Virus record (IMG/VR): IMGVR_UViG_3300032285_004054
Location: 124,001-188,000 of that record
Direction: 5' to 3' (one strand)
Length of the DNA: 64,000 bases
Each line of letters opens with the position of its first letter. Positions within the stretch are counted from its first letter, which is position 1. A program made the translations under genes and the position numbers. Below are positions 6,916-62,312 of the stretch, in pieces. The notes under the pieces were generated by a model. It was not told where the DNA came from. It saw only the letters and a list, made by a program, of their open reading frames with translations, and searched no databases.

Positions 6916-6944
6916 TTGCCTGTTTATAAAATGCCATCTATTAT
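6916..6944 (+). promoter_or_regulatory. Sigma70-like promoter, start codon 6 nt downstream
   Basis: TTGCCT-17 nt-TATTAT-6 nt-ATG(6951). Confidence 0.6.
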
Positions 6945-6950
6945 GGTGGC

Positions 6951-7481
6951 ATGAATATATTTGTAACCGACAGCGATCCTATTGTTTCTGCTAGGGAGCT
7001 TTGTGATAAACACGTTCGTTCTAAGATGCAGATAGAGTCTGCTATTATGCTTCAAAACGCGTTTACCAATGAGCAATTAAGTTCATCTGATTGTCCTAGA
7101 ACTAAAACAGGTAAGGTTCGTTCATCAGGTAAAGGTTATTCAAAACATCAATGTACTATCTGGGTTAAAGAATCTAGAGCTAATTTTGAATGGCTCGTTG
7201 AACATGCTCTAGAAATGTTTAATGAACGTAATTACCGTTGGCCTGATTCCTCAGAGCATTTTACTAAGGAATTTATTCTCTGGTGCAAAGACAATATGAA
7301 TAAAACTATTCATACGACTAATACATTAACACCTTTTACCGTAGCTATCAGTCAAGATAGTAACTGTCGTAAAATTAAAGACTTTGATAAACTATCTGTT
7401 ATCGAGCAATACAGACTTTATATTAAGTACGATAAACTTTTTGCTGCTTGGACAAAGCGTAATAAACCTAATTGGTTTTAA
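6951..7481 (+). CDS. denV: Pyrimidine-dimer DNA glycosylase / endonuclease V-like protein
   Basis: MNIFVTDSDPIVSARELCDKHVRSKMQIESAIML...HQCTIWVKESRANFEWL...YRLYIKYDK typical of the phage Pyr_excise-like family. Confidence 0.75.
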   Translation: MNIFVTDSDPIVSARELCDKHVRSKMQIESAIMLQNAFTNEQLSSSDCPRTKTGKVRSSGKGYSKHQCTIWVKESRANFEWLVEHALEMFNERNYRWPDSSEHFTKEFILWCKDNMNKTIHTTNTLTPFTVAISQDSNCRKIKDFDKLSVIEQYRLYIKYDKLFAAWTKRNKPNWF

Positions 7482-8248
7482 CCTACTTTCCAGATATTAA
7501 TATCAAATAATATTGCAGACGGTACTGCAACTGGAGCCGCTACTACGAACGCAGTCGAAGCATCTCGTCTAACGACGAACTTATACTTTGTTGTTAAAGA
7601 AGTAACTTGAAATTGACCTTTAATACTTATTTGCGGCGAATTACTTCCCCATGCATCAATAGCAACAGTTACGGGCCCTTGCAGTATAACATTATTGCTA
7701 TCATCTACAAGATAAGCATCTAAAGCAACGTTTAAGTCAGCATACGGTACAGCAATTCCTGGACCGTCTAATTCAACCCTATATATTCCAACTGAAGGAA
7801 ATTGAAATGTATTGTCGCTGTTTATAGTTATACCGATATTATTAAGTTGATTTACAGGTGTACTACTAATTTTGAGTGTTCTTGTTGGAGTACTACCTGC
7901 AAATAAATTAACAGCTGAGCCGTTTACAGCACCAGTTGAACTAGTAACTGTTTTTAGTAATCTTGGTGCTTCAACTGAACTAGCAACTTCAACAAGTCTT
8001 GTGTAAGGGTAATTTCCAATATTGTTCACATTACTACTTAATCCGTGTATCAAAGAAAGTAAATAGTTATAATCTATTTGTTCTTGTATTTTAGCAGCAC
8101 TTATTTGACATGTAAGATAATTTGTATTGGCATTTATATACTGCAGAGAATCGCCCATACAATCATCTAGACTAATTGACCAAGGACCTGTTCCTGGGCA
8201 GGTTATAACTGGCGGGGAACCACCTGGAGGATTAAAAAGTGTAGCCAT
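7478..8248 (-). CDS. Putative virion fibre/appendage protein
   Basis: N-terminal GDSLQYINANTNYL resembles the gp9/gp10-type coil anchor; beta-rich C-terminus (NTFQFPSVGIYRVEL) resembles C1q/BclA heads; AATAAATA late motif at 8263-8270. Confidence 0.5.
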   Translation of the reverse strand: MATLFNPPGGSPPVITCPGTGPWSISLDDCMGDSLQYINANTNYLTCQISAAKIQEQIDYNYLLSLIHGLSSNVNNIGNYPYTRLVEVASSVEAPRLLKTVTSSTGAVNGSAVNLFAGSTPTRTLKISSTPVNQLNNIGITINSDNTFQFPSVGIYRVELDGPGIAVPYADLNVALDAYLVDDSNNVILQGPVTVAIDAWGSNSPQISIKGQFQVTSLTTKYKFVVRRDASTAFVVAAPVAVPSAILFDINIWKVG

Positions 8249-8277
8249 ATACTATTGTAAAATATTTATTACTGTTT

Positions 8278-8844
8278 TTAACTATTTCGAGCTAAAATAT
8301 CGCTTGCCTTTATTTTAACAGGTACAGGTTCTTTACCTTGTACAAGCTCTGCTTCAATAACATTTGGATCAGGTAATGTTTTACCGCTTAAAATATGCTT
8401 CATAATTTCTTCTCTAGAAGCTAAGACAACTTGTGTATTATTATTTGTAATAGTGTTACCTGTTATGTTTTGGGTAGGTGTTTGTACAGTAGAAGCTGCT
8501 ATTTGTTTTTTACCTTCTATTTTTAATTGTTCAATTTCTTTTGTTGCTTCAATTTTTTTCTTTTGAAGCATCGTTTTATTGAGAATTTCAATCGCACCTG
8601 TTGCTGAATTTATTAATGAAGCAAGAGAAGCTATTTCTTCTGGATCTTGACCTTGTATAATAAGATCTTTTACACTGTTAATAGAATGAATACTTGCATC
8701 AATAAGCTCTCCTGATTTTTTAAGAACGAATTCAGTAACCTTATCTTCAGATAGATCTGTTACCGGTGCAGGTACTAAAGCTGTTGTAGGTTCAAAACTA
8801 AAACTAGAAAGCTCGTCAAGTAATGTATTTAAATTGTCCGACAT
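8278..8844 (-). CDS. Probable terminase small subunit (gp16-like)
   Basis: DPEEIASLASLINSATGAIEILNKTMLQKKK...TITNNNTQVVLASREEIMKHI parallels the T4-like TerS layout (P-xxEV-xxLI...TNN-xFVGST-EL); TATAAATA at 8852-8859. Confidence 0.6.
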   Translation of the reverse strand: MSDNLNTLLDELSSFSFEPTTALVPAPVTDLSEDKVTEFVLKKSGELIDASIHSINSVKDLIIQGQDPEEIASLASLINSATGAIEILNKTMLQKKKIEATKEIEQLKIEGKKQIAASTVQTPTQNITGNTITNNNTQVVLASREEIMKHILSGKTLPDPNVIEAELVQGKEPVPVKIKASDILARNS

Positions 8845-8881
8845 TGTTGATTATTTATAATAGTATATTAATTTAATAGAT

Positions 8882-9046
8882 ATGAGTATTACAGTCAACA
8901 CTCTCTACGGTACTTTTATTGTACCTGATGAGAAGCAAGATCAATTAATTCAATGGCTCCAGACTAATGCTGTAAAAGCAGGTCAGGAACCAATCGGTGA
9001 AATCAAAGAAGATAACTATACCGGGAGACAATTAATCAATGAGTAA
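8882..9046 (+). CDS. Small hypothetical protein (54 aa)
   Basis: Not in the ORF track; hand-translated MSITVNTLYGTFIVPDEKQDQLIQWLQTNAVKAGQEPIGEIKEDNYTGRQLINE; stop overlaps the dut start. Confidence 0.65.
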   Translation: MSITVNTLYGTFIVPDEKQDQLIQWLQTNAVKAGQEPIGEIKEDNYTGRQLINE

Positions 9047-9542
9047 CACAGTACAAGAACTACAAGGTAAGTCTAAGGAAGAACTTCAGGAACTCTATAG
9101 ACTTCTATTCGTTAAAACTCATCCTGATGCAGTACTACCTGTACGTAACCATAAGGATCCTGTTTTTGGTGATTCAGGTTATGATGTTACTGCAGTAGAA
9201 GATACACTAATTCCTGCAAGAGGTGCTAATATTGTTCCTGTAGGTTTAAAACTTGCCCAGGTTCCTCCTGGTTTCTGGATTCGTATTGAGAGCCGTTCCG
9301 GTCTTCAGTTTAAGCATAACATCTCTGCTTTTAACGGTATTATTGATAACGGCTATCGTGGGGATATGGGTGTAAGGCTTATTAATAGCTCTAATACTGA
9401 TTACCAGGTTAAGAAAGGTGATCGTATTGCCCAGCTTGTTCTCTACCCTCTTATTGTAGTAACTGAAGAAAATGTTCAGTTTGTAACAGAAGCTACTGAT
9501 TCTACAAGAGGCGAAAATGGCTTTGGATCTTCTGGAAATTAA
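9039..9542 (+). CDS. dut: Trimeric dUTPase
   Basis: GDSGYDV, RIESRSGL, GIIDNGYRGDMGV, RIAQLV, RGENGFGSSG motifs. Confidence 0.97.
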   Translation: MSNTVQELQGKSKEELQELYRLLFVKTHPDAVLPVRNHKDPVFGDSGYDVTAVEDTLIPARGANIVPVGLKLAQVPPGFWIRIESRSGLQFKHNISAFNGIIDNGYRGDMGVRLINSSNTDYQVKKGDRIAQLVLYPLIVVTEENVQFVTEATDSTRGENGFGSSGN

Positions 9543-9551
9543 GCGTATAAT
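9523..9551 (+). promoter_or_regulatory. Sigma70-like promoter, start codon 6 nt downstream
   Basis: TTGGAT-17 nt-TATAAT-6 nt-ATG(9558). Confidence 0.6.
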
Positions 9552-9557
9552 CGCTTT

Positions 9558-10475
9558 ATGTTTCAAGGTCTATTTGTAGAGAAATATCGTCCTAAGACTT
9601 TAGAAGAGCTTGTCCTGTCAAAGGACGAGCACGACTTTTTTAAGTCTTTAAAAGAAAGAGAAGAGATACCTAATTTGCTCTTTGCAGGTTCTCCGGGTAC
9701 AGGTAAGACCTCTCTATCGAAGATCATTGTTAATGATATACTTGATTGTCAGTATTTGTATATTAACGCTTCTGACGAAAACGGTATTGATACAATTCGT
9801 ACAAAAGTAATTAGCTTTGCACAAACTAAGTCCCTCGACGGTAAGCTTAAGGTTATTCTATTTGACGAGTGTGATGCTTTAACTCTTGATTCACAGAAAG
9901 CTCTTCGTAATGTAATTGAAGAGTATCCAGATAATACTCGTTTTATTTTTACGTGTAACTATCTGTTTAAGATTATACCTGCACTTCAATCCCGTTGTCA
10001 GATTTTTAATCTTATACCTCCATTTAACGGTATTCTCGGTAGAGTTGTACACGTTTTAAAAGATCAGGACATAACAGTACCTGAAGAGGAGAAGCCAAAG
10101 CTTATTGAGTATGTGCGTCGTAATGCTCCTGATCTTCGTCGTATTATCAATGACGTACAGAAGTTTTCTTACTCAGGTACATTATACATTAAAACAAATA
10201 GCTCTAAGAATGTAGCTGAAAAGATTGTTGATGACTTATTGATTAAGAAAGTTGATCTAACAGATATTAGAAAATATACTATCGAACACGAACAGGATTT
10301 TTCTGGTGATTATCTTCAACTACTAAAAGAGATGTTTGAAGCAGTTTATAATCATACTACAATCAACGATAAATCTTCTATACTTCTGAATATATCAGAA
10401 GCTATGTATAGAGATTCTATTGTAGTAGATAAAGAGATAAACTGGTTTAGCAGCTGTTTAAAGATTAGATCTTAA
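9558..10475 (+). CDS. gp44: Sliding-clamp loader AAA+ subunit (gp44/RFC-like)
   Basis: VEKYRPKTL, GSPGTGKT, INASDENGID, ILFDECD, ALQSRC. Confidence 0.95.
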   Translation: MFQGLFVEKYRPKTLEELVLSKDEHDFFKSLKEREEIPNLLFAGSPGTGKTSLSKIIVNDILDCQYLYINASDENGIDTIRTKVISFAQTKSLDGKLKVILFDECDALTLDSQKALRNVIEEYPDNTRFIFTCNYLFKIIPALQSRCQIFNLIPPFNGILGRVVHVLKDQDITVPEEEKPKLIEYVRRNAPDLRRIINDVQKFSYSGTLYIKTNSSKNVAEKIVDDLLIKKVDLTDIRKYTIEHEQDFSGDYLQLLKEMFEAVYNHTTINDKSSILLNISEAMYRDSIVVDKEINWFSSCLKIRS

Positions 10476-13980: not shown

Positions 13981-16212
13981 TTATCCTTCGTAAAAGGCGT
14001 TTAGAAATTCTGTTCTTTTTTGAGCTACGGCGCTGTTAAAATTACGTGCAAAATCTACAGGAGAAGGACCTGAGTCAGGAGAAGCATTAATATTAATAGT
14101 TTGGTCGTCAGGCGGAGATGGCATTCCTTGACTATTAGCAATCGCTTTAGCTAATGATTGCATATTCATGCTAAGTTCTTTAACAGCACCGTAAGTATTT
14201 TTAGTATTCTCAGCTATTTCACTAGATTTGTCGTCACTATTTGCTGCAGTTTGCGTTTTTTCTTTAATAGAGGGTTCAACTATAGGTTCAGGTTTCTTTG
14301 ATTTAAATTCATTCTTTATATAATCAGGTGAATTTACATTCTCAGACGCTTTTTCAATCTGAGATTTAAGAGATGATGTTTTGTCGTGTAGCTCTGCTGT
14401 TGTTTTAGCTAATTGCTGCTCATCAGTTAAAACCGGTTTAGATGGTTCAGCTTTAGCTGTCTCGGGTTTGATACTTTCAGCTTTAGCTGTCTCGGGTTTG
14501 ATACTTTCAGCTTTAGCTGTCTCGGGGGTAGAAACCGGTTCAATTTTACCCTCCTTTAATGTACCTTCTGTCTGATTATTATTTTTTAACTGATTTTCAG
14601 CAGACATTGATTTTACTTTTTGCTGTGCAGTTAAAAGAGCTGTAGCTTTACCCAAAGGAGCTGTTTCTAGATTTTTAGTTATTTCTTTTTGTTGTTCAGG
14701 GTTAAGTTGTTTCCAATTTTCTGGATTAATGCCTTTTGGTGCTTCAGCAGGTTTTACTGTCTCAGGTGTTTTCTTATCGGTAGTTTCTGTTTTAGCCTCT
14801 TCCCCTTGTTTACCAGGTTCGGGATGTGTTGCTTTATATATATCTCTACCTGCTAAAGCTGCGTCAATACCTATACTAGCAGCAGTACCTGCACCTGGTA
14901 ACGTACTTGCAGCACCTGAAGCAACTTCAAGACCTGCCCCGGTCCAATCCCCTTCAAGAGCTCTTTGTGCACCGAAACCTAATCCCGCTACTAAACCTAT
15001 ACCAGGTATTTTTTTAAGTACACTTTTACCTAAAGCTTTTGCACCTGCTTTTTCAGCTACTTTGATACCTTCTTTTTCAGCTACTTTGATACCTTCTTTT
15101 TCAGCTACTTTAACACCTTCTTTTTCAGCAACTTTTTCAGCTGTTTTTGCACCTTCTTTTTCAAGAGCTTTTGCTCCTTCTTTTTCAGCAACTTTTTCAG
15201 CTGTTTTTGCACCTTCTTTTTCAAGAGCTTTTGCTCCTTCTTTTTCAGCAACTTTTTCAGCTTCCTTTTCGGCTGCTTTCTCGGCTTCCTTTTCGGCTGC
15301 TTTTTCAGCAGTTTTTCCTTTATTCTTAAAATGGTCCCATAGCTCTCCTAAACCACCTAATATACCTGCTCCTGCAAGAGCTGCAGCTGCGTTGTTATTA
15401 TCTTTTTTATCTTCGGTAGGTTTTTTATTATTATCTGTTTTATTAAACCAATTTTTTAAAAGCTCTAAAATACTATGCGTGTCTTTTGCTTCTTGATCTT
15501 CGTCCTTTTCAAGCTGACTTTCTTTTGAAATAAAAGATGTCTCCCCGGGTTGTAGTGTTGTTGTAGTAGCAGGTGCTCCCGGGGGATTACTATTGGTATC
15601 CTTTGGCTGTTGTAGAATTGATGATGCTTTTGGATCAATTACCGTAGCTACTTTAATTGTAAATTCATTTAATCTGTTAATTAACTTATCAATTGATTCT
15701 TTAGATGCTTTTTCGAAGCCTACTTCATTTTTACGTTCAACAAAATCTTTAACTTTATTAGTAGCTTTTTCACCAGCTTGTTTACCTAAACCGGTAATCT
15801 CTTTTCCAAAATCAATAATAGCATCTACACCGAAATGCTTTGCTAAGTTAAACTTTTCTCCGTCTTCTTTTTTATCGCCATGCTCTTTCTTATCAGTATC
15901 TTCTTTCTTTGCTTTATCTGAAACATCTGATTGTACTGATACAGGTACTGCAGGGGTTGGTGTAACTTCTTTTTTAGTCGGTAAAACTAGTTGTACATTA
16001 TCTAAACCTGTATTGTCTTTTTTTGCTAAGGAAGGCTGAGATGGAATAGCGTTTCTTTTTAAATCAAAAATCTTTGAGATATTACCTACAAATTGTTCTA
16101 ACAATCCTTGAGATTTTACAATAGGTTCCTTATAGGTCTCAACAGTAGGAGAACTCTTTAAATCAGGAGAAGACAGTACATCCTGTACAGGTTTTTCCGG
16201 AGTTTCAGCCAT
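13981..16212 (-). CDS. Tail length determinant / tape-measure-like protein (gp29-like)
   Basis: 743 aa, low complexity, EKEGAK repeats, KKIPGIGLVAGLGFGAQRALEGDWTGAGLEVASG motif typical of T4-like tail-length proteins; gene order. Confidence 0.65.
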   Translation of the reverse strand: MAETPEKPVQDVLSSPDLKSSPTVETYKEPIVKSQGLLEQFVGNISKIFDLKRNAIPSQPSLAKKDNTGLDNVQLVLPTKKEVTPTPAVPVSVQSDVSDKAKKEDTDKKEHGDKKEDGEKFNLAKHFGVDAIIDFGKEITGLGKQAGEKATNKVKDFVERKNEVGFEKASKESIDKLINRLNEFTIKVATVIDPKASSILQQPKDTNSNPPGAPATTTTLQPGETSFISKESQLEKDEDQEAKDTHSILELLKNWFNKTDNNKKPTEDKKDNNNAAAALAGAGILGGLGELWDHFKNKGKTAEKAAEKEAEKAAEKEAEKVAEKEGAKALEKEGAKTAEKVAEKEGAKALEKEGAKTAEKVAEKEGVKVAEKEGIKVAEKEGIKVAEKAGAKALGKSVLKKIPGIGLVAGLGFGAQRALEGDWTGAGLEVASGAASTLPGAGTAASIGIDAALAGRDIYKATHPEPGKQGEEAKTETTDKKTPETVKPAEAPKGINPENWKQLNPEQQKEITKNLETAPLGKATALLTAQQKVKSMSAENQLKNNNQTEGTLKEGKIEPVSTPETAKAESIKPETAKAESIKPETAKAEPSKPVLTDEQQLAKTTAELHDKTSSLKSQIEKASENVNSPDYIKNEFKSKKPEPIVEPSIKEKTQTAANSDDKSSEIAENTKNTYGAVKELSMNMQSLAKAIANSQGMPSPPDDQTININASPDSGPSPVDFARNFNSAVAQKRTEFLNAFYEG
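14446..14526. repeat. 30-bp coding tandem repeat (about 2.7 copies; PETAKAESIK)
   Basis: TTCAGCTTTAGCTGTCTCGGGTTTGATACT repeated. Confidence 0.9.
15045..15310. repeat. Nested 12/24/60-bp coding tandem repeats (AEKE / KVAEKEGI / KEGAKALEKEGAKTAEKVAE)
   Basis: Repeated TTTTTCAGC...CCTTC units, visible in both DNA and translation. Confidence 0.88.
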
Positions 16213-16231
16213 ATATATTATTTAAACTACA

Positions 16232-19566: not shown

Positions 19567-20139
19567 TTAAACTACTACACCACCGGGAAGACCGGGTGTT
19601 GTATTACCTGCAAGGGAAACAGGGCGTAGCTGCCAATACTGATATGCAAGGGTAGCTGTTACTGTTTGAATTGTACCTGTGTCACCGATGTTGTAAGCCA
19701 TTTCACCGATATTCTGTACATATGCACCTACAAGGTTGTAAACACGGATACCGTTATTTTGCTTATCAAGTAGCTCTAATGTAATGACGGAATCAGGTCC
19801 AGGGGTATTGTAGTTACCTGTGCTTGTACTTTCGTCAAACGTATTTAGAGTTACCTGCTCAAGTACACCACGAATATCGTAGTTAGCATCACTTCGGAAT
19901 GTAACATTCCAAGCAGCAGAATTAGGGTATGAAGCAGTACCGGGTACGTTAAACTGAAGTCCCATGAAAGGAACCTGTACGTTGTTAATTGTACGGCCTG
20001 GTAGAGCAGCTGACTCAACATAAACGAGAGCGTTTTCGTTGAATTGTGTGTTAGCTAAGGTATGTACACGAAATTGGAATTTACGTGCAAAGTCTTTAGC
20101 TGTTGCTACTCTATAGAAATCGGAGATGTTTTGGCTCAT
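19567..20139 (-). CDS. gp19: Tail tube protein
   Basis: ESAALPGRTINNVQVPFMG...PGTASYP...WNVTF...TVTATLAYQYW; perfect TATAAATA upstream. Confidence 0.9.
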   Translation of the reverse strand: MSQNISDFYRVATAKDFARKFQFRVHTLANTQFNENALVYVESAALPGRTINNVQVPFMGLQFNVPGTASYPNSAAWNVTFRSDANYDIRGVLEQVTLNTFDESTSTGNYNTPGPDSVITLELLDKQNNGIRVYNLVGAYVQNIGEMAYNIGDTGTIQTVTATLAYQYWQLRPVSLAGNTTPGLPGGVVV

Positions 20140-20149
20140 ATGTTTAAAT

Positions 20150-20157
20150 TATTTATA
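20150..20157 (-). promoter_or_regulatory. T4-type late promoter TATAAATA
   Basis: Exact T4 late consensus 10 nt upstream of the tube ATG; gp55 is encoded in the window. Confidence 0.75.
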
Positions 20158-24952: not shown

Positions 24953-25288
24953 TTAATCGTTGTTATTACTAACAATATTAATTAAGGTAGTTCTTAAATG
25001 CTCAACTAATGCATCTCTATCATGCGGATTATTTGCATGAAATATATGAACTTTTTCACCGTTAAAATCATAACCTAAAATAATAAATGCTTTTAGATAC
25101 TCAGTAGCAATATTATCTAAGTGCTCAAGATCTTGAAGCTTGTAAAGTTTGGACGATTCTGTTTCTCCAAACCTCGCGAAGGCTTCCTTTATAACATCTT
25201 GTATATTTACACCGCTAAGATTAGGTAGAGTAATCTCTTTTTTCTTAGCAGAAGATTTTCTTTTCTTGGGTTGATCTTCTGCAGGCAT
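24953..25288 (-). CDS. Hypothetical late protein
   Basis: 111 aa ORF; TAAATA ends 6 nt before the ATG. Confidence 0.7.
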   Translation of the reverse strand: MPAEDQPKKRKSSAKKKEITLPNLSGVNIQDVIKEAFARFGETESSKLYKLQDLEHLDNIATEYLKAFIILGYDFNGEKVHIFHANNPHDRDALVEHLRTTLINIVSNNND

Positions 25289-25297
25289 TTTAAATAT

Positions 25298-27718: not shown

Positions 27719-27724
27719 ATGTGT

Positions 27725-27752
27725 ATTATAGGTTAAAATTAGAGACCGGCAA
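27725..27752 (-). promoter_or_regulatory. Sigma70-like promoter of folE2
   Basis: TTGCCG-16 nt-TATAAT-6 nt-ATG(27718). Confidence 0.65.
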
Positions 27753-41267: not shown

Positions 41268-41273
41268 ATGAAT

Positions 41274-46385: not shown

Positions 46386-46397
46386 AAAATTTAATCA

Positions 46398-46425
46398 ATA
46401 ATATACGATTGATATGTTTAATCAA
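46398..46425 (-). promoter_or_regulatory. Sigma70-like promoter of gp55
   Basis: TTGATT-16 nt-TATTAT-12 nt-ATG(46385). Confidence 0.6.
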
Positions 46426-49019: not shown

Positions 49020-49604
49020 ATGAAGCAGGTTAATAGATGTATGTATTGTCAGAGTACGAGTTACGGTAGAGGTTGTAACTACGGTCCTCACGGTATACAC
49101 TTTCATCCTGATGACACCAAGCTTTGTTCATATTGCGGTTCAACCAACTACGGTAATGGCTGCTTAACAAACCCTTTTGGTAAAGTACATATTCACGGAA
49201 TAATGTATAATAATATGTTAAAAGAATCACTAGTTAACGGGTTTTATATGCACGAAATGTTTAAAGATCTTAAGGAATACCGAGCATACAAGTTAGGTAT
49301 TATTGACGAGAGCGGAAATAAAATTAAAGAACCTATAACGGAAGAGGAGCGTGCTGCTTTCTCCCCTATAACCAAAAACTTTATTAAAATAAAGCGTTAT
49401 TTGGGATCTAAGTTAGATCTTATTAACCGTGCAACAATCCTCGAAAAAGAAACAAAATTAAACTATAATAAGGAAGATCATAAAAAGCTGTTAAAGCATA
49501 CAGATGAGTTTGAAAATGTTTTTGAACAGTTACATAGAGCAGTAGATGCAGCTCTAGAGGATGGTTTAACCCACGAGCAAATTGAAAGCTTGTTGCAGAA
49601 ATAA
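49020..49604 (+). CDS. Hypothetical late protein with duplicated Cys/His motif
   Basis: Two CxxCxSxxYGxGC...PxG..HxH units, then AYKLGIIDESGNKIK...EEERAAF; TAAATA 6 nt before the ATG. Confidence 0.75.
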   Translation: MKQVNRCMYCQSTSYGRGCNYGPHGIHFHPDDTKLCSYCGSTNYGNGCLTNPFGKVHIHGIMYNNMLKESLVNGFYMHEMFKDLKEYRAYKLGIIDESGNKIKEPITEEERAAFSPITKNFIKIKRYLGSKLDLINRATILEKETKLNYNKEDHKKLLKHTDEFENVFEQLHRAVDAALEDGLTHEQIESLLQK

Positions 49605-49624
49605 ATTTACATTATAATATGGGT

Positions 49625-50122
49625 ATGAAAATAAAAGAATACCCTGATAAGAGGATTTGTACTATAGATTTCTATCCTCTATTAGAACAAGCTACTAAAG
49701 AAGTATTAACGGCTTGTAAGCGTTATAACATACCTCTTAATACTACCGGAAGGGGTTCAACAGATGTGTCCCGCTTTTTTTATCATTTTTGTTTAGAAAA
49801 GTTTCTAGAAGGGTACAAGAGCTGTAATTCAAAGTACCCTAAAGTACTGGTTTTTTACCCTATTACTAATGGTGTATTGAAGAATTTTGTTGACAAGGGA
49901 CTTGATAAGGTCCTTAAGATATTACCCGTGCCTTGGTGTAAGGTAAAGAAGTTTGATTCACCGGATACGTCAACAGCTGCGCTAGGTGCAATTGAAAAGA
50001 ATCGTAACGTAGCACAGAACTTAGACAAGTTTGCTAGATCGAATGAACTGTTTTCCTTCCTGAAGAAAAAATATAAAGTTTTTTTAAATGGTACAGTTGA
50101 TTTAACTGAAGACCCCCAATAA
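49625..50122 (+). CDS. Hypothetical protein
   Basis: ORF-track ATG (49619) abuts a TATAAT; the second ATG (49625) fits the 6-nt spacing seen elsewhere. Confidence 0.6.
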   Translation: MKIKEYPDKRICTIDFYPLLEQATKEVLTACKRYNIPLNTTGRGSTDVSRFFYHFCLEKFLEGYKSCNSKYPKVLVFYPITNGVLKNFVDKGLDKVLKILPVPWCKVKKFDSPDTSTAALGAIEKNRNVAQNLDKFARSNELFSFLKKKYKVFLNGTVDLTEDPQ

Positions 50123-50188
50123 GTGAATTAAAGACCCTTTAAGCCCCCTGAACAATTGTTTTTATGGAACTTTCAATAAATATATTAT

Positions 50189-50530
50189 ATGTCTAAATTC
50201 GCATCTGCTCTAAAATCTGTTTTTGAAGATATGGCTCTAGGAACACCTGCTCCTCAGGCCGGAAACTCTGCTGCAACCGCAAGTGCTCCTACTGCTACTG
50301 GTCCTGTTGCTACTTCTAATCCTCCTAATCAAACTTTAACTCCTAGTCCTTCTACTGGAGCACAGCCTAACCCTCTTAAAGCTGCAGCTGCTGTTACTGG
50401 TGCTAAGCCTAATTTACAAGCTAACGATCCTAACCTTTTAGCTTTTGCTAAATCTCAAAATTTAAATCCTCAAGATGTTTATAAAGCTTTAACATCTTCT
50501 GCTACTACCCATCAGCCTAACGTTCCTTAA
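50189..50530 (+). CDS. Ala/Pro/Thr-rich late protein
   Basis: AATAAATA at 50175-50182, 6 nt before the ATG; first gene of a tightly coupled operon. Confidence 0.7.
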   Translation: MSKFASALKSVFEDMALGTPAPQAGNSAATASAPTATGPVATSNPPNQTLTPSPSTGAQPNPLKAAAAVTGAKPNLQANDPNLLAFAKSQNLNPQDVYKALTSSATTHQPNVP

Positions 50531-53294: not shown

Positions 53295-53322
53295 TTGATA
53301 AAGAAATACGAGGTTATATAAT
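53295..53322 (+). promoter_or_regulatory. Sigma70-like promoter of the queD-queE operon
   Basis: TTGATA-16 nt-TATAAT-8 nt-ATG(53331). Confidence 0.68.
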
Positions 53323-53330
53323 AACCCGTA

Positions 53331-53612
53331 ATGAACACCGCAGAAACGTTTTCTTTTACAAAAGATGAACTAAATCTTATTACTGAATCTCTCTTATTTT
53401 CATCATCTGTTAATATCTGTGCAGATTGGGATGAAAATTCAATTACTAGTATGCTAGAGCTCGCTAAGAAGATTAAGAAGCATACAAAAACTGATACTGA
53501 TCTTAAAAATATTTACTTCTTAGAAGAAGAGAATTACGAAGAAAAGTGGACCGGTGATATTATTAAAAACTTTAAGGGAAAAATTAGAGTACTGGATTTA
53601 AGTAAAGCATAA
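53331..53612 (+). CDS. Hypothetical protein
   Basis: 93 aa, first gene of the queD operon. Confidence 0.7.
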   Translation: MNTAETFSFTKDELNLITESLLFSSSVNICADWDENSITSMLELAKKIKKHTKTDTDLKNIYFLEEENYEEKWTGDIIKNFKGKIRVLDLSKA

Positions 53613-55780: not shown

Positions 55781-55798
55781 TCATATTAAATATATGAT

Positions 55799-56800
55799 AT
55801 GTTGGATTTTAGGTCAATAGTACATGAAAAGCTCTTTTTAGAAGAAGAAGAGATAGCTTCGCCTCCTACCAGTACTGCAAGTGATGCTGAGATAACTTTT
55901 TTTAAGAAAATTAACACAGCTAATAGTTCAATTCCTCAAAAACAAGAAGATGTTAGGAAATTTGTACAAACACTTTTAAGTAAACAAAGCGATTATCAGG
56001 CTGTAAAGGATTTTATTCCTTATGAGGATTATCTACCTATAATAGACATTATCTATACCAGTCTAGGTAGTAAAGCAGGTTTTTTAGCAAGTAAAAGCCC
56101 AGATGGTACCTTAGATAAACTTTGGAATAACGTTAATGCTGCGCTAGATGCAAATCCTACTATTTTAAATAAACTTAAAAATAAAAATATTGATACGTAC
56201 GTATATCAGGATACTGTTATAGAAGGAATGGCCAAGAATATTCTAGATTTTAAAAATAAGAGCTTAATAGCAGCAGCAGCTTATCAAACAATAGGTCCAA
56301 TGTTTATTGTACCGGCCTTAGAATCAATTTTCGAAAAAAGACTTAGCGTCGAAACACAGTTAAAAATTTCAGGTAATAAAACAGGCTATGTAACACCGGA
56401 TATTTACAGAAGCTTTATACAGGATATTTTTACACACTACACTGAATACAGTACAGGCGGAAAAAAAGTAGATGATAAAATACTTTCAGGTTTAACAGAA
56501 GCAGGTATAAACTATCAAGCTTTAATTTATATAGCAATTTCTACTATAAAATTTTATAATAACCTATTAGTAGATTTATTAACTAAATCGTTTGCAGAAG
56601 ATGATCCTAAGCAAGATATAATCGGTAAATATCTAGAAAAGGAATTAGTAGATAACACTAATGCAAAAAAATATGCATTTCAGTTAGCGTTAACAGGTAA
56701 ATTTAACTCTGATTTTGGAGTCAAAACCTCTGATATTGAAAAATCACCTGCTGGTAAACAACAATTTCCAGCATCACCAACACCAACACCAACTGCGTAA
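55799..56800 (+). CDS. Hypothetical late protein
   Basis: 333 aa; TAAATA 6 nt before the ATG; MLDFRSIVHEKLFLE start. Confidence 0.75.
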   Translation: MLDFRSIVHEKLFLEEEEIASPPTSTASDAEITFFKKINTANSSIPQKQEDVRKFVQTLLSKQSDYQAVKDFIPYEDYLPIIDIIYTSLGSKAGFLASKSPDGTLDKLWNNVNAALDANPTILNKLKNKNIDTYVYQDTVIEGMAKNILDFKNKSLIAAAAYQTIGPMFIVPALESIFEKRLSVETQLKISGNKTGYVTPDIYRSFIQDIFTHYTEYSTGGKKVDDKILSGLTEAGINYQALIYIAISTIKFYNNLLVDLLTKSFAEDDPKQDIIGKYLEKELVDNTNAKKYAFQLALTGKFNSDFGVKTSDIEKSPAGKQQFPASPTPTPTA

Positions 56801-57388: not shown

Positions 57389-58386
57389 CGTTTAAGCTTT
57401 AACTTAGCCTCGATACCTGAGTAAGCGTTATCAACGATATATTTGTACGGAAATTCGTTAAGTTGTAAACTCGTACATACTTCATTTATATCTTTAAATT
57501 TACTAAACTCTTTCGGCCAAATAAAGATCTTCTTACCAGAGTCAACAACTGATAATATCTTCTTATCTACTTCTTTATTATCTTTATCGTTATCGTAGAC
57601 GTATATAAGCTCATGACCAAAGCAAGTATTGAGAAATTGTTCCTGCTTTTCTGTCGTTGATGTACCACCCATTGCTACTGCATTTCTAACAAACATAGCA
57701 TCAATAGGTCCCTCAAAAATAAAGATATACGGTATATCTGAATCAATATTATTTTCGCCGTACAAACATTTTTCACCATACTTAGTTAGGTATTTTGGAA
57801 ATGCATCACCGCACAATACTCTACTCTGATAGCTTTCTATTTTATTATTTTTAGAGTAAAAAGGTATAATAAGTCTATTCTTATGTACCTTGTCATCAAA
57901 TGACATATAAAGAGCCTTAGGTCTATTTACTGCAGTTGTTAATCTTCTCTCTTGACAGTACGTTAACGCACTTTCAATTAACGGCCACTGACTCGTATCT
58001 TTAAAGAAATTACATTGATAGTCTTCAAACAAATTTATACTATCCTCCGGTATTGAAGGAACAGATTTAGTATATGTATTACTATTTTTTGAACTTACCG
58101 GGTCGGTAATTGTGTCATATGTTTTAGATTCTCTTAGAATCTCACTATAGCTTTTTTTACTTACCTCTTGAATCCAAGAAGACTCTTGCCAAGATCTACT
58201 ACAGTTAAAGCAGTAAAAATACCTATCATTAGTAAAATAAAACAAACGCCGCTTACTGCCAGCCGAAGAGCCTTCATTACATATACAACATTCTGCATTG
58301 TAGCACCCCTGGTGTTTTTTGTAAGTAGGTCGCTTGCAGTAGGTATAGATGTTTTGTACAACATAACTTTGAGGTAGTAACTCCAC
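57385..58386 (-). CDS. gp61: DNA primase
   Basis: Zn finger CCIC...YCFNC, RLIIPF, PKY, TOPRIM FEGPIDAMF, VYDND, KDINE. Confidence 0.94.
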   Translation of the reverse strand: MELLPQSYVVQNIYTYCKRPTYKKHQGCYNAECCICNEGSSAGSKRRLFYFTNDRYFYCFNCSRSWQESSWIQEVSKKSYSEILRESKTYDTITDPVSSKNSNTYTKSVPSIPEDSINLFEDYQCNFFKDTSQWPLIESALTYCQERRLTTAVNRPKALYMSFDDKVHKNRLIIPFYSKNNKIESYQSRVLCGDAFPKYLTKYGEKCLYGENNIDSDIPYIFIFEGPIDAMFVRNAVAMGGTSTTEKQEQFLNTCFGHELIYVYDNDKDNKEVDKKILSVVDSGKKIFIWPKEFSKFKDINEVCTSLQLNEFPYKYIVDNAYSGIEAKLKLKR

Positions 58387-58392
58387 CTCAAT

Positions 58393-58420
58393 AGTATACT
58401 ATATTTTTATAACTTATCTA
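58393..58420 (-). promoter_or_regulatory. Sigma70-like promoter of primase
   Basis: TAGATA-16 nt-TATACT-6 nt-GTG(58386). Confidence 0.55.
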
Positions 58421-60029: not shown

Positions 60030-60640
60030 TATTTTAATCTCTTAATAGGGCAGCAACAATGCTTGTATATATTACAACCACCGCAATGACGACCGTTATC
60101 AAGGTAGATATGAGGTCTTGCGCATGCAAAATGAGTAATTGACTTTACATCATCCGGGTTTGTCATATCCAAAAACTTAGGATCACCTTTAGGTTTTAGG
60201 ATATATTTCGAGGGATTAGGATCATTAATAAAATCGTTCAAAGCTTTTCTTTGAGCTCTCCTCTTAGCTCGCTCTCTATTTTTAATCTTAGGAGCATAAC
60301 ATTTCAAATACTTAAGAGGTAGCTCGGTATTATCCCTGTATTTGTATTTGTTACGAATTTCAATATCTGTGAATCCGTCTTTAAGCATCTTTCTTGCATC
60401 CTTACAAACGTAGTATTGTACATACTCAGACGAAGAAGGAAACTTAAGCTTAATAGCCTGCTTCTCAAGCATTGCTTTACTAATTTTAAATTCCTGACCA
60501 GTAAGAATACAAATAACAACTGGCTTACGAGGACGCTTGAGCACTCTCTCTTTTTTAACCTTAACTGGTTTTGTTTTAACAGGCTTAGGCTTAACAGTCT
60601 TAACCTTCGTAGGTTTAACTTTCTTTTTCTTTTTAATCAT
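60029..60640 (-). CDS. Lys-rich hypothetical protein with C-terminal Cys cluster
   Basis: KVKP repeats at the N-terminus; CARP...HCGGC...HCCC at the C-terminus. Confidence 0.65.
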   Translation of the reverse strand: MIKKKKKVKPTKVKTVKPKPVKTKPVKVKKERVLKRPRKPVVICILTGQEFKISKAMLEKQAIKLKFPSSSEYVQYYVCKDARKMLKDGFTDIEIRNKYKYRDNTELPLKYLKCYAPKIKNRERAKRRAQRKALNDFINDPNPSKYILKPKGDPKFLDMTNPDDVKSITHFACARPHIYLDNGRHCGGCNIYKHCCCPIKRLK

Positions 60641-60651
60641 AAATAAAATAT

Positions 60652-60837
60652 ATGCCCATCATTAAAGGAAATAAAGCAAAAAGTAAAAAATCAATTGCTA
60701 AAAATATTAAAACCGAGCTAAAAGCAGGTAAGCCTAAAAAACAAGCAGTAGCCATTGCTTTAAGTTTAGCGGGTAAAAAGAAGAAAACTGTCAAGGAATC
60801 TTTTGACAGTGTAGTTGCTTCTATACTTGGTGAATAA
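60652..60837 (+). CDS. Small basic phage protein (KQAVAIAL family)
   Basis: MPIIKG...SIAKNIKTELKAGKPKKQAVAIALS; CATAAATA 6 nt before the ATG. Confidence 0.75.
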   Translation: MPIIKGNKAKSKKSIAKNIKTELKAGKPKKQAVAIALSLAGKKKKTVKESFDSVVASILGE

Positions 60838-60871
60838 AAGAAAAACGGCCGGATTTCTCCGGCCGTTTCTT
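60838..60871. terminator. Bidirectional Rho-independent terminator
   Basis: AAGAAAAACGGCCGGA-TTTC-TCCGGCCGTTTCTT hairpin between convergent genes. Confidence 0.88.
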
Positions 60872-60884
60872 AAGTTAAGAACAA

Positions 60885-61115
60885 TTAGCGATTACCCTTA
60901 ACGCGTGCCCAACGACCCTTGTTGTCACGTACGTTGTAGTAGCGTGCACGGAGGAGGGCAGTATTGGTACGATCAACGAAACCAAGGAACTCGTACTTGG
61001 AAGGGTTGATGTAGTTCTCCACGATGCTCTCCCTCATGGTACGAGGCATTGCGGAATCGACGTCAAAGTTAGCAATCTCGCTAACATTCTTTGTTGTGAT
61101 GGTGTTGTTTGTCAT
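60885..61115 (-). CDS. Hypothetical protein (76 aa)
   Basis: Own promoter TTGAAT-16 nt-TATTAT at 61126-61153; ends at the terminator. Confidence 0.7.
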   Translation of the reverse strand: MTNNTITTKNVSEIANFDVDSAMPRTMRESIVENYINPSKYEFLGFVDRTNTALLRARYYNVRDNKGRWARVKGNR

Positions 61116-61145
61116 AACGATTTTTATAATAGAAGCTGCTTTCTA

Positions 61146-62312
61146 TTATTCAACTGAAAAACCAATAATTCTTTTTTCACTCTTAACGTCACCATGTACG
61201 TTTTCTACTTCGGCATTGTAAATTTCAGCCAAAGACATAGGCTCTGTAACTTTAACTTTAAGCTTCATCTTCTTAACAAGCTTTTGTGCTGTTTTTACAG
61301 AAAGTTTATCAAATTGATATTCTTTCTTAAGTCTTCCCTTACGTAAGAGAGCTTGATCGAGTTCATGTCTCGGGTTATTGTAAGTTGCAATAATTGAGAT
61401 ATTAAAAATATCCCCCATCATACCGTCTGTAAGGTTTAGAATAGTAGAAACTAGGGACGATTGATCACCACCCTCTCTTTGAAGAAGTGCTTTCTCAGCA
61501 TCTTCAATAATTAGAATACTAGATTTTTTATCAAGAAGTGCAGGTAGAAAGGACGGATCAACAATTGCATCAATAAAGTTTGTCGGTACGTAAATCATAT
61601 TACGCTTAACAACTGATGAAAGGTATTTGATATAAGTTGTCTTACCTGTACCAGGGTCGCCATGAAACAAATACAAACCGCTTTTGTTCTTGTTTAACTC
61701 TTCAACGATCTCATCATGCACTTTTTCTAATTCTGGCTCATAATGAGTTGTAATATCATATGTTTCAGGTAAAACAACTTCAAAAGGTTCAAAATTAAAA
61801 CCACTAGCTGTTTTTATAATTGTATGAATTACAGCTTTATAATTTGGTTTATAGATAAATTCTTCAAAGTCTTCTAAAGGCGGACGAACACCTGGAGGAT
61901 GATAAAAACGTAGAACATAATACTGTTCTTTAGTGTTATTAACACTTCTTTGTTCAGCCATTTCAATTTCAATAACAATATTTTCTTTGTATAGATATGT
62001 ACCTCTGTATTGTGCATCCCCATCTTCTTCCCACGTTAAACCTCCGTCATCTACATAACCTGAAGCTCCTTTACTAAGTTCATTAGGTACAAAAATCCAA
62101 TCAGAAATTAGCTTACCTTTTTCTTTAATTATTTCTACTGCATTAAAACTATATTGAAATGAAGAGTTGTACACACAAGGACAGCATTTAAATCTTTCCA
62201 TAAAGAAAGATCCAACAGGCAATATATGGGTTGTGTGACTTTTTGTAAAAAAATCATGAGACTTATCAAAGATTAAAGGATCGCCGTCTCCTGAGATGGT
62301 AATTTTTTTCAT
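61146..62312 (-). CDS. AAA+ ATPase (BCS1-like)
   Basis: HGDPGTGKTT, IIEDAE, LNLTDG, ATYN, LDQALLRKGRL. Confidence 0.88.
   Translation of the reverse strand: MKKITISGDGDPLIFDKSHDFFTKSHTTHILPVGSFFMERFKCCPCVYNSSFQYSFNAVEIIKEKGKLISDWIFVPNELSKGASGYVDDGGLTWEEDGDAQYRGTYLYKENIVIEIEMAEQRSVNNTKEQYYVLRFYHPPGVRPPLEDFEEFIYKPNYKAVIHTIIKTASGFNFEPFEVVLPETYDITTHYEPELEKVHDEIVEELNKNKSGLYLFHGDPGTGKTTYIKYLSSVVKRNMIYVPTNFIDAIVDPSFLPALLDKKSSILIIEDAEKALLQREGGDQSSLVSTILNLTDGMMGDIFNISIIATYNNPRHELDQALLRKGRLKKEYQFDKLSVKTAQKLVKKMKLKVKVTEPMSLAEIYNAEVENVHGDVKSEKRIIGFSVE

What the first reader, a model, noticed from the sequence alone, without database searches (positions are those of the whole stretch)
6916..61153. Sigma70-like promoters placed for leaderless translation of replication genes
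Seen: TTGnnn/TAGnnn-16 or 17 nt-TAnnnT elements end 6 nt before the start of denV, gp44, folE2, gp43 (GTG), gp46 (GTG), gp61 (GTG) and 49625, 7 nt before gp32, 8 nt before uvsX and 53331, and 10-12 nt before 61115 and gp55. Most spacers are 16 nt, and I saw no AGGAG-type Shine-Dalgarno before these starts. With the usual 6-7 nt from -10 to the start site, transcripts begin at or next to the start codon. Inference: the phage relies on leaderless initiation, giving nearly every replication gene its own promoter buried in the upstream gene. This constrains host identity (not Bacteroidota-type TAnnTTTG promoters) and could allow translation when host leadered mRNAs are shut off.
Basis: partly seen in the sequence, partly recalled or inferred. 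Interest (0 to 1): 0.65.

Follow-up and report, generated by a model that had tools for sequence, protein, structure and literature searches.

The report
Promoters butted against phage start codons
In this 218-kb T4-like phage from a metagenome, promoter elements sit about 6 bases before the start codons of many genes, so their mRNAs probably have no leader, a layout known from some bacteria and a Thermus phage but, as far as my literature searches went, not from T4-like phages.

Summary
The phase is far above chance. Genome-wide, TTG-N16/17-TANNNT ends exactly 6 nt before a gene start in 17 of 280 crude gene calls, against 0.5 in AT-matched shuffles.

The start codons and the promoter position are conserved in relatives from other metagenomes. 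T4, a cyanophage and a Bacteroidota phage lack the peak.

The pattern is wider than reported. About 24 early promoters outside the window and about 75 T4-late-type TAAATA boxes also abut start codons. Genes without such a box mostly overlap the upstream gene. Shine-Dalgarno motifs are at noise level.

No transcript 5' ends could be mapped, because no RNA data exist, so "leaderless" remains an inference. "Nearly every replication gene" is overstated, the host is unresolved, and the shut-off idea is untested.

This is a new member of a known kind, of moderate interest.

The parts
6916..6953 (+). TTGCCT-N17-TATTAT-N6-ATG before the denV-like gene (6951-7481)
   Evidence: weak Pyr_excise match
9523..9560 (+). 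TTGGAT-N17-TATAAT-N6-ATG before the gp44 clamp loader (9558-10475). The promoter lies largely inside the upstream ORF (gap 15 nt).
27716..27752 (-). TTGCCG-N16-TATAAT-N6-ATG before FolE2 (26885-27718)
28615..28652 (-). TTGAAC-N16-TATAAT-N7-ATG before the gp32 single-strand DNA-binding protein (27739-28617)
   Evidence: The promoter is kept in relatives, but the distance varies from 6 to 11 nt, or 23-45 nt with a G-poor leader.
32093..32131 (-). TTGACT-N16-TATTAT-N8-ATG before UvsX (30989-32095)
34025..34062 (-). TTTACA-N16-TATTAT-N7-ATG before the thymidylate-kinase-like gene (33467-34027).
38183..38219 (-). TTGAAA-N16-TATTAT-N6-GTG before gp43 DNA polymerase (35642-38185)
   Evidence: The start codon and a promoter 6-8 nt upstream are conserved in about 50 distinct relatives.
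41265..41301 (-). TAGCAA-N16-TACAAT-N6-GTG before gp46 (39456-41267)
   Evidence: GTG is at the same codon in 4 relatives and ATG in the most distant one. The -10 is 6-7 nt upstream in the four GTG relatives and 10 nt in the ATG one.
46383..46425 (-). TTGATT-N16-TATTAT-N12-ATG before the gp55 late sigma factor (45825-46385). Predicts a leader of about 6 nt, not a strictly leaderless mRNA.
49590..49627 (+). TTGTTG-N17-TATAAT-N6-ATG before the 165-aa ORF starting at 49625. An in-frame ATG at 49619 touches the -10 box and would be left out of this transcript.
53295..53333 (+). TTGATA-N16-TATAAT-N8-ATG before a 93-aa ORF (53331-53612)
58384..58420 (-). TAGATA-N16-TATACT-N6-GTG before gp61 primase (57385-58386)
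   Evidence: GTG or ATG at the same codon, with TATAAT 6-7 nt upstream, in 3 relatives.
61113..61153 (-). TTGAAT-N16-TATTAT-N10-ATG before a 76-aa ORF (60885-61115)
16210..16224 (-). Late-type TAAATA-N6-ATG before a 743-aa gene with a peptidase/endolysin-like domain (13981-16212)
20137..20157 (-). Late-type TATAAATA-N10-ATG before the tail tube gene (19567-20139)
8842..8859 (-). Late-type TATAAATA-N7-ATG before a 188-aa ORF (8278-8844)
25286..25300 (-). Late-type TAAATA-N6-ATG before a 111-aa ORF (24953-25288)
50177..50191 (+). Late-type TAAATA-N6-ATG before a 113-aa ORF (50189-50530)
55787..55801 (+). Late-type TAAATA-N6-ATG before a 333-aa ORF (55799-56800)
60640..60654 (+). Late-type TAAATA-N6-ATG before a 61-aa ORF (60652-60837)

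Best explanation
**What it is.** The window belongs to a 218.4-kb, 36% GC, distant T4-like phage from a metagenome. The phage has almost no 5' untranslated regions. Genes fall into two groups.

- In the first group, a promoter is placed so that its -10 element ends about 6 nt before the start codon. RNA polymerase would then start at, or within a few bases of, the A or G of ATG/GTG. The resulting mRNA has no leader, or a leader of 6 nt or less, and no Shine-Dalgarno sequence.
- In the second group, the start codon overlaps or abuts the stop codon of the upstream gene. These genes are presumably translated by coupling.

**Three promoter classes share this layout.**
- Early: gcTTGAca, 17-nt spacer containing a conserved CCT, TAkAmT, then 6 nt. 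These sit before small ORFs at the two ends of the genome.
- Late: a T4-late-type (TA)TAAATA box, most often 6 nt before the start, presumably read with the phage's gp55.

**Shown versus inferred.** Shown here are the motif geometry, its statistics, the conservation of starts and promoter position in relatives, the lack of SD motifs, and the contrast with other phages. Inferred are that these motifs fire as promoters, that transcription starts on the start codon, and that host ribosomes initiate on the 5'-terminal AUG/GUG.
For: **Phase with start codons**
- The distance histogram peaks at 6 nt: 26 cases against 2-3 at other distances.
- The full motif at 6 nt occurs 17 times against 0.49 in AT-matched shuffles, and at 5-9 nt 34 times against 2.4.
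- Strong promoter-like sites are in excess only in the 5-9 nt bin: 27 against 3.2 expected.
- TAAATA lies 4-14 nt before 75 genes against 12.5 expected, with its mode at 6 nt (19 against 1.3).

**The starts are real**
- gp43 begins (V/M)YRNA, with synonymous changes from codon 2, in about 50 distinct relatives of 43-88% identity. A promoter sits 6-8 nt upstream although its sequence has turned over.
- The same holds for gp61 and gp46.
- The bS21 N-terminus matches known bS21 proteins.

**Start-site context**
- In the 63-site promoter-abutted set the starts are 58 ATG and 5 GTG. TTG starts were excluded from that set, but none of the 37 genes with a -10 box at 6 nt starts with TTG.
- The base at -1 is a pyrimidine in 22 of 25 cases, against 71 of 133 elsewhere (p=0.0015).

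**Replication and controls**
- The same 6-8 nt peak appears in three divergence groups of relatives.
- T4 and cyanophage S-CRM01 have late boxes 16-30 nt upstream. T4 has SD 4-mers before 57% of genes, this phage before 7%. G is depleted upstream here, 0.12 against 0.18 genome-wide.

**Genome architecture**
- The median gap to the upstream gene is 36 nt before sigma70-type starts and 21.5 nt before late-type starts.
- 73% of genes with no signal lie 5 nt or less from the upstream gene, or overlap it.

**Geometry in the literature**
- The geometry equals that of published leaderless genes (PMC3160421, PMC4007540, PMC12340547).
Against: - There are no RNA data for this phage. One DNA metagenome run holds it and no RNA run does, so no 5' end has been seen.
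- The host is unknown, so neither its polymerase start-site preference nor its ability to translate leaderless AUG or GUG mRNAs is known.
- GUG-initiated leaderless mRNAs are poorly translated in E. coli (PMC4007540, discussion).
- Several sites have 8-12 nt between the -10 box and the start (UvsX, 53331, 61115, gp55). These would give 2-6 nt leaders.
- In relatives, gp32 can sit 23-45 nt behind its TATAAT with a G-poor leader. Leaderlessness is therefore not obligatory in this clade.
- Promoter-like matches as such are no more frequent than in shuffles.
- My gene calls are crude (longest ORF plus codon usage), although the ORF-based histograms do not depend on them.
Confidence: 0.7

Rival explanations
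1. Chance or AT-richness artefact: TANNNT and TTG are common in a 36% GC genome, and the reader picked starts to fit.
For: Generic promoter-like sites are no more frequent than in dinucleotide shuffles (93 against 84 +/- 8).
Against: - The phase with starts is 10- to 35-fold above AT-matched shuffles, above internal and out-of-frame ATG controls, and above other distances in the same upstream regions.
- It recurs in divergent relatives.
- It is absent from T4, S-CRM01, C48C1 and PTm1, which have similar AT content.
Confidence: 0.02
2. The promoters are real, but translation begins at a downstream in-frame codon, so the first codons form a short leader.
For: No proteomic data exist. For small early ORFs with no homologues, the first ATG cannot be verified.
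Against: - For gp43, gp46, gp61, gp32 and bS21 the peptide is conserved from residue 2.
- The first codon varies only between GTG and ATG across relatives, which marks it as an initiation codon.
- In-frame stops lie 0-7 codons upstream, so the ORFs open exactly there.
Confidence: 0.05
3. The A/T-rich boxes close to the start, especially the TAAATA boxes and the -10-only cases, act mainly as SD-independent translation signals (unstructured, S1-type or Kozak-like) on longer transcripts. They are not promoters.
For: - Upstream regions are generally rich in AATA, ATAA and TAAT and poor in G.
- Relatives translate gp32 from G-poor leaders with no SD.
- 32 genes have only a -10-like hexamer.
Against: - The sigma70-type sites carry a -35 box at a fixed 16-17 nt.
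- TAAATA matches the T4 late box, and gp55 is encoded.
- The peak is 1-2 nt sharp.
- Gap sizes match promoter lengths.
- The preference for a pyrimidine at -1 fits transcription start-site choice.
Confidence: 0.12
4. The replication-gene sites are a phage-specific middle class that needs a phage activator, as T4 middle promoters need MotA and AsiA. They are not plain host sigma70 promoters. They may still give leaderless mRNAs.
For: - These sites differ from the early class: 16-nt rather than 17-nt spacer, agT(T/A)Ga rather than gcTTGAca, and TAG accepted at -35 in gp46, gp61 and other sites.
- In T4, replication genes are expressed in the middle class (general knowledge).
Against: - No MotA or AsiA homologue was found, while the same MotA search finds T4's motA; AsiA had no positive control.
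- The boxes do not match the MotA box at the 12 sites.
- The MotA-box count test is inconclusive.
- Most of these sites are acceptable sigma70 promoters on their own.
Confidence: 0.25

Closest known systems
Leaderless ("TA-led") genes of Actinobacteria and Deinococcus-Thermus (PMC3160421; PMC4007540; PMC12340547; PMC4633059)
   Same: - TANNNT whose first T is about 12 nt before the initiation codon.
- No SD.
- AUG or GUG at the 5' end.
- Occasional 1-few nt leaders.
- A -35 box at about 17 nt strengthens the promoter.
   Different: - Here the feature is in a low-GC T4-like phage, with strong consensus -35 boxes.
- It is combined with an almost complete lack of SD in the remaining genes. Those host groups still use SD for leadered genes.
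- No mapped start sites exist here.
Thermus thermophilus phage phiYS40 (Sevostyanova et al. 2007, as summarised in PMC3594737)
   Same: A large lytic phage whose middle and late transcripts are mostly leaderless, with the idea that infection shifts translation towards leaderless mRNA.
   Different: - phiYS40 is not T4-like, and its leaderless state was mapped experimentally.
- The shift there is attributed to the IF2/IF3 balance.
- This phage also shows the layout in its early class, and it encodes a bS21 homologue whose role is unknown.
Phage T4 early / middle / late promoter programme
   Same: - Core replication genes are present (gp32, gp41-like, gp43, gp44, gp46, gp47, gp61, UvsX), together with gp55.
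- Early genes are small ORFs behind strong sigma70-type promoters.
- The late box is TATAAATA.
   Different: - In T4 the late box lies about 20-30 nt before starts, and 57% of genes have SD 4-mers. No sigma70 peak lies next to starts.
- T4 has MotA, which this phage lacks.
Pelagibacter phage HTVC008M
   Same: - Second-best hit to gp43 among named phages (32% identity).
- Its late-type TAAATA box sits exactly 5 nt before 12 gene starts. This is the only other phage tested that shows start-abutted late boxes.
   Different: - HTVC008M has SD 4-mers before 46% of its genes and no clear sigma70-type peak next to starts.
- Its bS21 was not detected with this phage's bS21 as query.
Bacteroidota gene expression (TTG-N19-TAnnTTTG promoters, SD-independent initiation), with Tenacibaculum phage PTm1 as control
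   Same: SD avoidance, A/T-rich and G-poor upstream regions, low GC, and a phage bS21 whose best matches among genomes are Bacteroidota.
   Different: - PTm1 shows TAnnTTTG 20-26 nt before its genes.
- This phage has no TAnnTTTG signal, and instead has canonical TTGACA/TATAAT-type boxes at 6 nt.

Membership tests
Bacterial leaderless (TA-led) genes | A -10 hexamer TANNNT ending about 6 nt before the initiation codon, at a frequency above background | tested here: met
   The peak is at exactly 6 nt, with z about 24 for the full motif.
Bacterial leaderless (TA-led) genes | No Shine-Dalgarno sequence before the start | tested here: met
   None of the 12 sites has one. Genome-wide, 7% of genes have an SD 4-mer against 57% in T4. 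Most of the remaining hits come from one paralogue family.
Bacterial leaderless (TA-led) genes | The initiation codon is AUG or GUG, and the first transcribed base is a purine | tested here: met
   In the 63-site set, 58 ATG and 5 GTG. TTG starts were excluded from that scan, but none of the 37 genes with a -10 box at 6 nt starts with TTG. Pyrimidine at -1 in 22 of 25 cases.
Bacterial leaderless (TA-led) genes | Transcription start mapped on the start codon | not testable with these tools
   No RNA run holds the sequence. The metagenome scan returned only DNA contigs with upstream sequence.
Bacterial leaderless (TA-led) genes | Protein made from the 5'-terminal codon | tested here: inconclusive
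   Supported indirectly by N-terminal conservation and GTG/ATG switching. No proteomics.
T4 MotA/AsiA-dependent middle promoters | motA and asiA genes present | tested here: not met
   No match at E<=0.1. The T4 positive control for MotA scored 3e-63. There was no positive control for AsiA.
T4 MotA/AsiA-dependent middle promoters | MotA box (a/t)(a/t)TGCTTtA about 12 nt upstream of the -10 in place of a -35 box | tested here: not met
   The 12 sites carry TTGnnn or TAGnnn at 16-17 nt. Genome-wide counts are uninformative.
Bacteroidota-type promoters | TAnnTTTG (-7) with TTG about 19 nt upstream, enriched before genes | tested here: not met
   285 occurrences against 264 expected, with no positional peak. 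The PTm1 control shows the peak at 20-26 nt.
T4-type late promoters (for the late class noticed here) | A TATAAATA-like box before late (structural) genes, and a gp55 homologue | tested here: met
   - 14 of 25 TATAAATA boxes lie 5-13 nt before genes.
- A TATAAATA box sits 10 nt before the tail tube gene, and a TAAATA box 4 nt before a gene with a weak baseplate-hub-catalyst match.
- gp55 is present.
- The distance to the start differs from T4.

The most novel reading that the evidence does not exclude
A whole clade of T4-like phages known only from metagenomes has dispensed with 5' UTRs. All three temporal promoter classes are fused to start codons: host-type early, a distinct 16-nt-spaced agT(T/A)Ga class for replication genes, and gp55-type late. 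All other genes are stop-start coupled. The phage's own bS21 re-tunes host ribosomes towards 5'-terminal AUG/GUG initiation. The host reads canonical sigma70 promoters yet makes essentially no use of SD, a combination not typical of any well-studied phylum.
Probability: 0.3. Interest if true: 0.75.

Novelty: new member of a known kind. Interest (0 to 1): 0.55.

Why it matters
- **Scope.** If transcript mapping confirms it, this would be the first T4-like lineage that I could find expressing early, replication and late genes from leaderless or near-leaderless mRNAs. My searches for "leaderless" together with T4-like, cyanophage, Pelagibacter or freshwater phage returned nothing relevant.
- **Annotation.** Start codons in such phages, including conserved GTG starts of gp43, gp46 and gp61, can be fixed from the promoter phase. 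SD-based gene finders will misplace them.
- **Host.** The layout narrows the unknown host to one with canonical -35/-10 recognition and SD-independent initiation.
- **Experiments.** It gives a compact natural set of promoter-start fusions in three temporal classes for studying 70S/leaderless initiation, and a possible role for phage-encoded bS21.

Tried and rejected
**Transcript evidence**
- The search for sequencing runs found one DNA metagenome run and no RNA run. I therefore did not use read laying.
- The metagenome scan with a degenerate gp32 5' pattern, run in the hope of finding transcript-like contigs that begin at the ATG, returned only DNA contigs with upstream sequence. These were useful only for comparison.

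**Host inference (unresolved)**
- gp43 against genome contigs found nothing.
- bS21 against genome contigs gave 80 of 80 Bacteroidota MAGs at 34-49% identity, but the search is seeded by exact peptide words and is therefore biased.
- The Atlas placed bS21 in viral clusters.
- Among PDB sequences the best hit reads like a Bacteroidota bS21 (organism not shown), with a 3-bit margin over the rest.
- The search for homologous proteins returned only the query itself.
- No psbA, NblA or hli (cyanophage marks) and no WhiB (actinophage mark) was found.

**Other dead ends**
- The generic promoter scan is not enriched over shuffles, so it cannot be used as evidence on its own.
- The first dinucleotide-shuffle script timed out. 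I replaced it with shuffles inside 25-nt blocks.
- The SD peak at 7-9 nt is largely a coding motif of one tandem paralogue family.
- A SAR11-type host looked attractive after the HTVC008M result, but that phage has SD 4-mers before 46% of its genes, against 7% here.
- The primary phiYS40 paper is not held in the library.

Full report
**Context.** The window is bases 124001-188000 of a single 218,400-bp virus record with 36% GC. CheckV estimates the record as complete. Its DNA polymerase is only 31-34% identical to those of cyanophages, Pelagibacter phage HTVC008M and phage C48C1. IMG/VR holds 79 related loci at 43-88% polymerase identity, plus one contig with an identical polymerase, probably the same phage. 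They also identify a DnaB-like helicase, gp47, tail tube, tail sheath and large terminase.

**Observation.** All 12 sites are at the stated coordinates, with the stated hexamers, spacers and distances. Nine spacers are 16 nt, and none of the sites has an SD-like 4-mer in the 20 nt before the start.

The phase with start codons is far above chance.
- Over the whole genome, TTGNNN-N16/17-TANNNT ends exactly 6 nt before a start codon opening an ORF of 60 aa or more 26 times, against 2-3 at any other distance.
- On 280 crude gene calls, the full motif at 6 nt occurs 17 times against 0.49 in shuffles that keep local AT content. At 5-9 nt it occurs 34 times against 2.4.
- TANNNT alone at 6 nt precedes 13% of gene starts but only 2-3% of internal or out-of-frame ATGs.
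- Among strong promoter-like sites, the only bin in excess is 5-9 nt from an ORF start: 27 against 3.2.

One caveat applies. The bare number of promoter-like matches is not above shuffles (93 against 84 +/- 8). The signal is the phase, not the count.

**Are the start codons right?**
- For gp43, about 50 distinct relatives begin (V/M)YRNA at the same codon. The codon is GTG in most and ATG in some, and synonymous changes begin at codon 2. A TTGA-N16/17-TAnnnT element lies 6-8 nt upstream even though its sequence has turned over.
- gp61 begins VE(L/G)LPQ in two relatives, with GTG and TATAAT 6 nt upstream. The most distant relative has ATG, with TATAAT 7 nt upstream.
- gp46 keeps GTG at the same codon in four relatives, with the -10 box 6-7 nt upstream. 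The most distant relative has ATG with the -10 box 10 nt upstream.
- A first codon that varies only between GTG and ATG is an initiation codon.
- In-frame stops lie 0-7 codons upstream of most promoter-abutted starts.

**Start-site context.** The 63 promoter-abutted starts in that set use ATG (58) or GTG (5). That scan did not consider TTG, but none of the 37 genes with a -10 box at 6 nt starts with TTG. The base at -1 is a pyrimidine in 22 of 25 sites at 6 nt, against 71 of 133 for other genes (p=0.0015). Pyrimidine at -1 followed by purine at +1 is the usual start-site preference of bacterial RNA polymerase (general knowledge). With the usual 6-nt discriminator, position +1 falls on the A or G of the start codon. 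The same geometry, with the first T of TANNNT about 12 nt before the start, defines predicted leaderless genes in bacteria (PMC3160421). It was verified by start-site mapping in Deinococcus (PMC4007540; PMC12340547).

**The pattern is wider than the finding.**
- *Early class.* The two ends of the genome (0-9.5 kb and 200-218.4 kb, outside the window) carry 24 promoters. They read gcTTGAca, then a 17-nt spacer with a conserved CCT, then TAkAmT, then usually 6 nt, then typically ATGAAAAAT. They stand before small ORFs with a median of 78 aa.
- *Replication class.* The window's replication-gene sites form a second class: agT(T/A)Ga, 16-nt spacer, TAT(A/T)AT, then 6-12 nt.
- *Late class.* T4-late-type boxes also abut starts. 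14 of 25 TATAAATA boxes lie 5-13 nt before a gene. TAAATA lies 4-14 nt before 75 genes against 12.5 expected, most often at 6 nt (19 against 1.3). Genes with such boxes include the tail tube gene and a gene with a weak baseplate-hub-catalyst match. gp55 is encoded.
- *The rest of the genome.* The layout is close to binary. The median gap to the upstream same-strand gene is 36 nt for sigma70-type starts and 21.5 nt for late-type starts. 73% of genes with no signal lie within 5 nt of the upstream gene or overlap it (median -1). There is essentially no room for leaders.
- *Shine-Dalgarno use.* SD 4-mers precede 7% of genes, and G is depleted upstream, 0.12 against 0.18 genome-wide. Most SD hits come from one tandem paralogue family, whose conserved C-terminal ..SFGGLL codons read TTTGGAGG just before the next ATG.

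**Controls on other phages** (same scripts).

| Phage | Sigma70-type peak near starts | Late or other box | Genes with SD 4-mers |
|---|---|---|---|
| T4 | none | TAAATA 20-30 nt upstream | 57% |
| Cyanophage S-CRM01 | none | TAAATA 16-24 nt upstream | 15% |
| C48C1 | none | no peak | 46% |
| Tenacibaculum phage PTm1 | none | TTG-N18-21-TAnnTTTG 20-26 nt upstream | not measured |
| Pelagiphage HTVC008M | none clear | TAAATA-N5-ATG before 12 genes | 46% |
| This phage | 24 cases at 6 nt | TAAATA, mode 6 nt | 7% |

PTm1 is a genuine Bacteroidota phage and shows the Bacteroidota promoter type. This phage has no TAnnTTTG signal (285 occurrences against 264 expected). Three divergence groups of IMG/VR relatives reproduce the 6-8 nt peak.

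**Limits.**
- No RNA run holds the sequence, so I did not use read laying and no 5' end has been seen.
- Distances of 8-12 nt (UvsX, 53331, 61115, gp55) imply 2-6 nt leaders.
- In relatives, the gp32 promoter is kept but its distance varies from 6 to 11 nt. In several relatives TATAAT lies 23-45 nt upstream of a CA-rich, almost G-free leader. The host therefore also translates SD-less leadered mRNA, and leaderlessness looks like one outcome of SD-independent initiation plus genome compaction rather than a strict requirement.
- "Nearly every replication gene" is overstated. The DnaB-like helicase, gp47, a second helicase, the GTP cyclohydrolase and the 4245-5216 ORF beside the reductase lack such promoters. 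The reductase large subunit has only a distant match, 12 nt from its start.
- The promoters are only partly inside upstream genes. The gaps are 8-44 nt.

**Host.** The host is unresolved.
- Canonical -35/-10 boxes and the PTm1 contrast argue against a typical Bacteroidota host.
- On the other side stand SD avoidance, low GC and a phage bS21 gene. That gene lies at G000 190721-190936 on the minus strand, and itself follows TTGCTA-N16-TATAAT-N7-ATG. Its best genome matches are all Bacteroidota. The bS21 evidence is weak, because the search is seeded by exact peptide words and the PDB margin is 3 bits.
- No cyanophage marks (psbA, NblA, hli) and no WhiB were found.
- MotA and AsiA are absent, and a T4 positive control confirmed the MotA search.

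**Comparison with the known.** Leaderless expression from -10 boxes abutting ORFs is established in Actinobacteria and Deinococcus-Thermus. It is also reported for most middle and late transcripts of Thermus phage phiYS40, where a shift in IF2/IF3 is thought to favour them (PMC3594737). My literature searches found no report of this in T4-like phages, cyanophages or pelagiphages. I therefore file it as a new member of a known kind. The features that are new for the kind are gp55-type late boxes fused to start codons, the near-complete absence of leaders across three temporal classes, and conserved GTG starts on three replication enzymes.

**Verdict.** My confidence is 0.7 that these sites give leaderless or near-leaderless mRNAs. 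Interest is 0.55.

Noticed in passing
window 8842-8859(-), 16210-16224(-), 20137-20157(-), 25286-25300(-), 50177-50191(+), 55787-55801(+), 60640-60654(+), and genome-wide: T4-late-type boxes (TATAAATA / TAAATA) also abut start codons. 75 of 280 genes have TAAATA 4-14 nt upstream against 12.5 expected, most often at 6 nt. In T4 and cyanophage S-CRM01 the same box lies 16-30 nt upstream.
   Followed up: yes
outside the window: G000 1-9500 and 200000-218400 (loci L081, L082): About 24 near-identical early promoters stand before small ORFs on the minus strand. They read gcTTGAca, a 17-nt spacer with a conserved CCT just after the -35 box, TAkAmT, then 6 nt and ATGAAAAAT. This class is distinct from the 16-nt-spacer agT(T/A)Ga class of the replication genes.
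   Followed up: partly
L080:222-437 (-) = G000 190721-190936, 2.7 kb beyond the window end: The phage encodes a 71-aa ribosomal protein bS21 (Pfam 41.9 bits) that itself follows TTGCTA-N16-TATAAT-N7-ATG. Its best genome matches are Bacteroidota MAGs, but the margins are small. A role in favouring phage mRNAs is speculation.
   Followed up: partly
outside the window: G000 195315-199008 (-), plus 7757-8392 and 8777-9142: A tandem array of about 10 paralogous genes of 94-178 aa, overlapping by 11 nt. Each ends ..SFGGLL, so that TTTGGAGGtttattagATG precedes the next copy. This family accounts for most of the apparent Shine-Dalgarno signal in the genome.
   Followed up: partly
whole genome: The architecture is binary. 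Genes with a sigma70-type promoter have a median 36-nt gap to the upstream gene, and late-type genes 21.5 nt. 73% of genes with no signal overlap or lie within 5 nt of the upstream gene, which suggests stop-start coupling.
   Followed up: yes
relatives L220, L223, L226-L229, L231 (gp32 upstream regions): In several relatives the gp32 TATAAT lies 23-45 nt upstream and is followed by a CA-rich, almost G-free leader with no SD. In others it lies 6-11 nt from the ATG. The same gene therefore toggles between near-leaderless and leadered forms.
   Followed up: partly
Pelagibacter phage HTVC008M, NC_020484 (loci L167-L174): Twelve genes carry TAAATA exactly 5 nt before the ATG (consensus TAAATAgtantATG), although 46% of the phage's genes have SD 4-mers. 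My literature searches found no report of this.
   Followed up: partly
window 38183-38185, 41265-41267, 58384-58386 (all -): gp43, gp46 and gp61 start with GTG. The GTG is kept in most relatives and becomes ATG only in the more distant ones (for gp43, those of about 67% identity or less). If the mRNAs are leaderless, this may be a way of holding down expression of these enzymes.
   Followed up: partly
window 49613-49627 (+): In TATAATatgggtATG, an in-frame ATG (49619) touches the -10 box, and the ATG at 49625 is the one in phase. Phage C48C1 has the same arrangement (TATAATATGGGCATG) at the annotated start of its DNA methyltransferase gene.
   Followed up: no
window 26885-27718(-), 32541-33470(-), 38216-39469(-), 41304-44141(-), 62309-63250(-): FolE2, a second GTP-cyclohydrolase-like gene, three to four glycosyltransferase-like genes, a methyltransferase and an IMPDH/GMP-reductase-like gene are interleaved with the replication genes. 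This may point to nucleotide or DNA modification.
   Followed up: no
G000 43821-46373, 189807-190714, 206522-206889: There are 14 tRNA genes in three clusters, all outside the window. The window itself has none.
   Followed up: no
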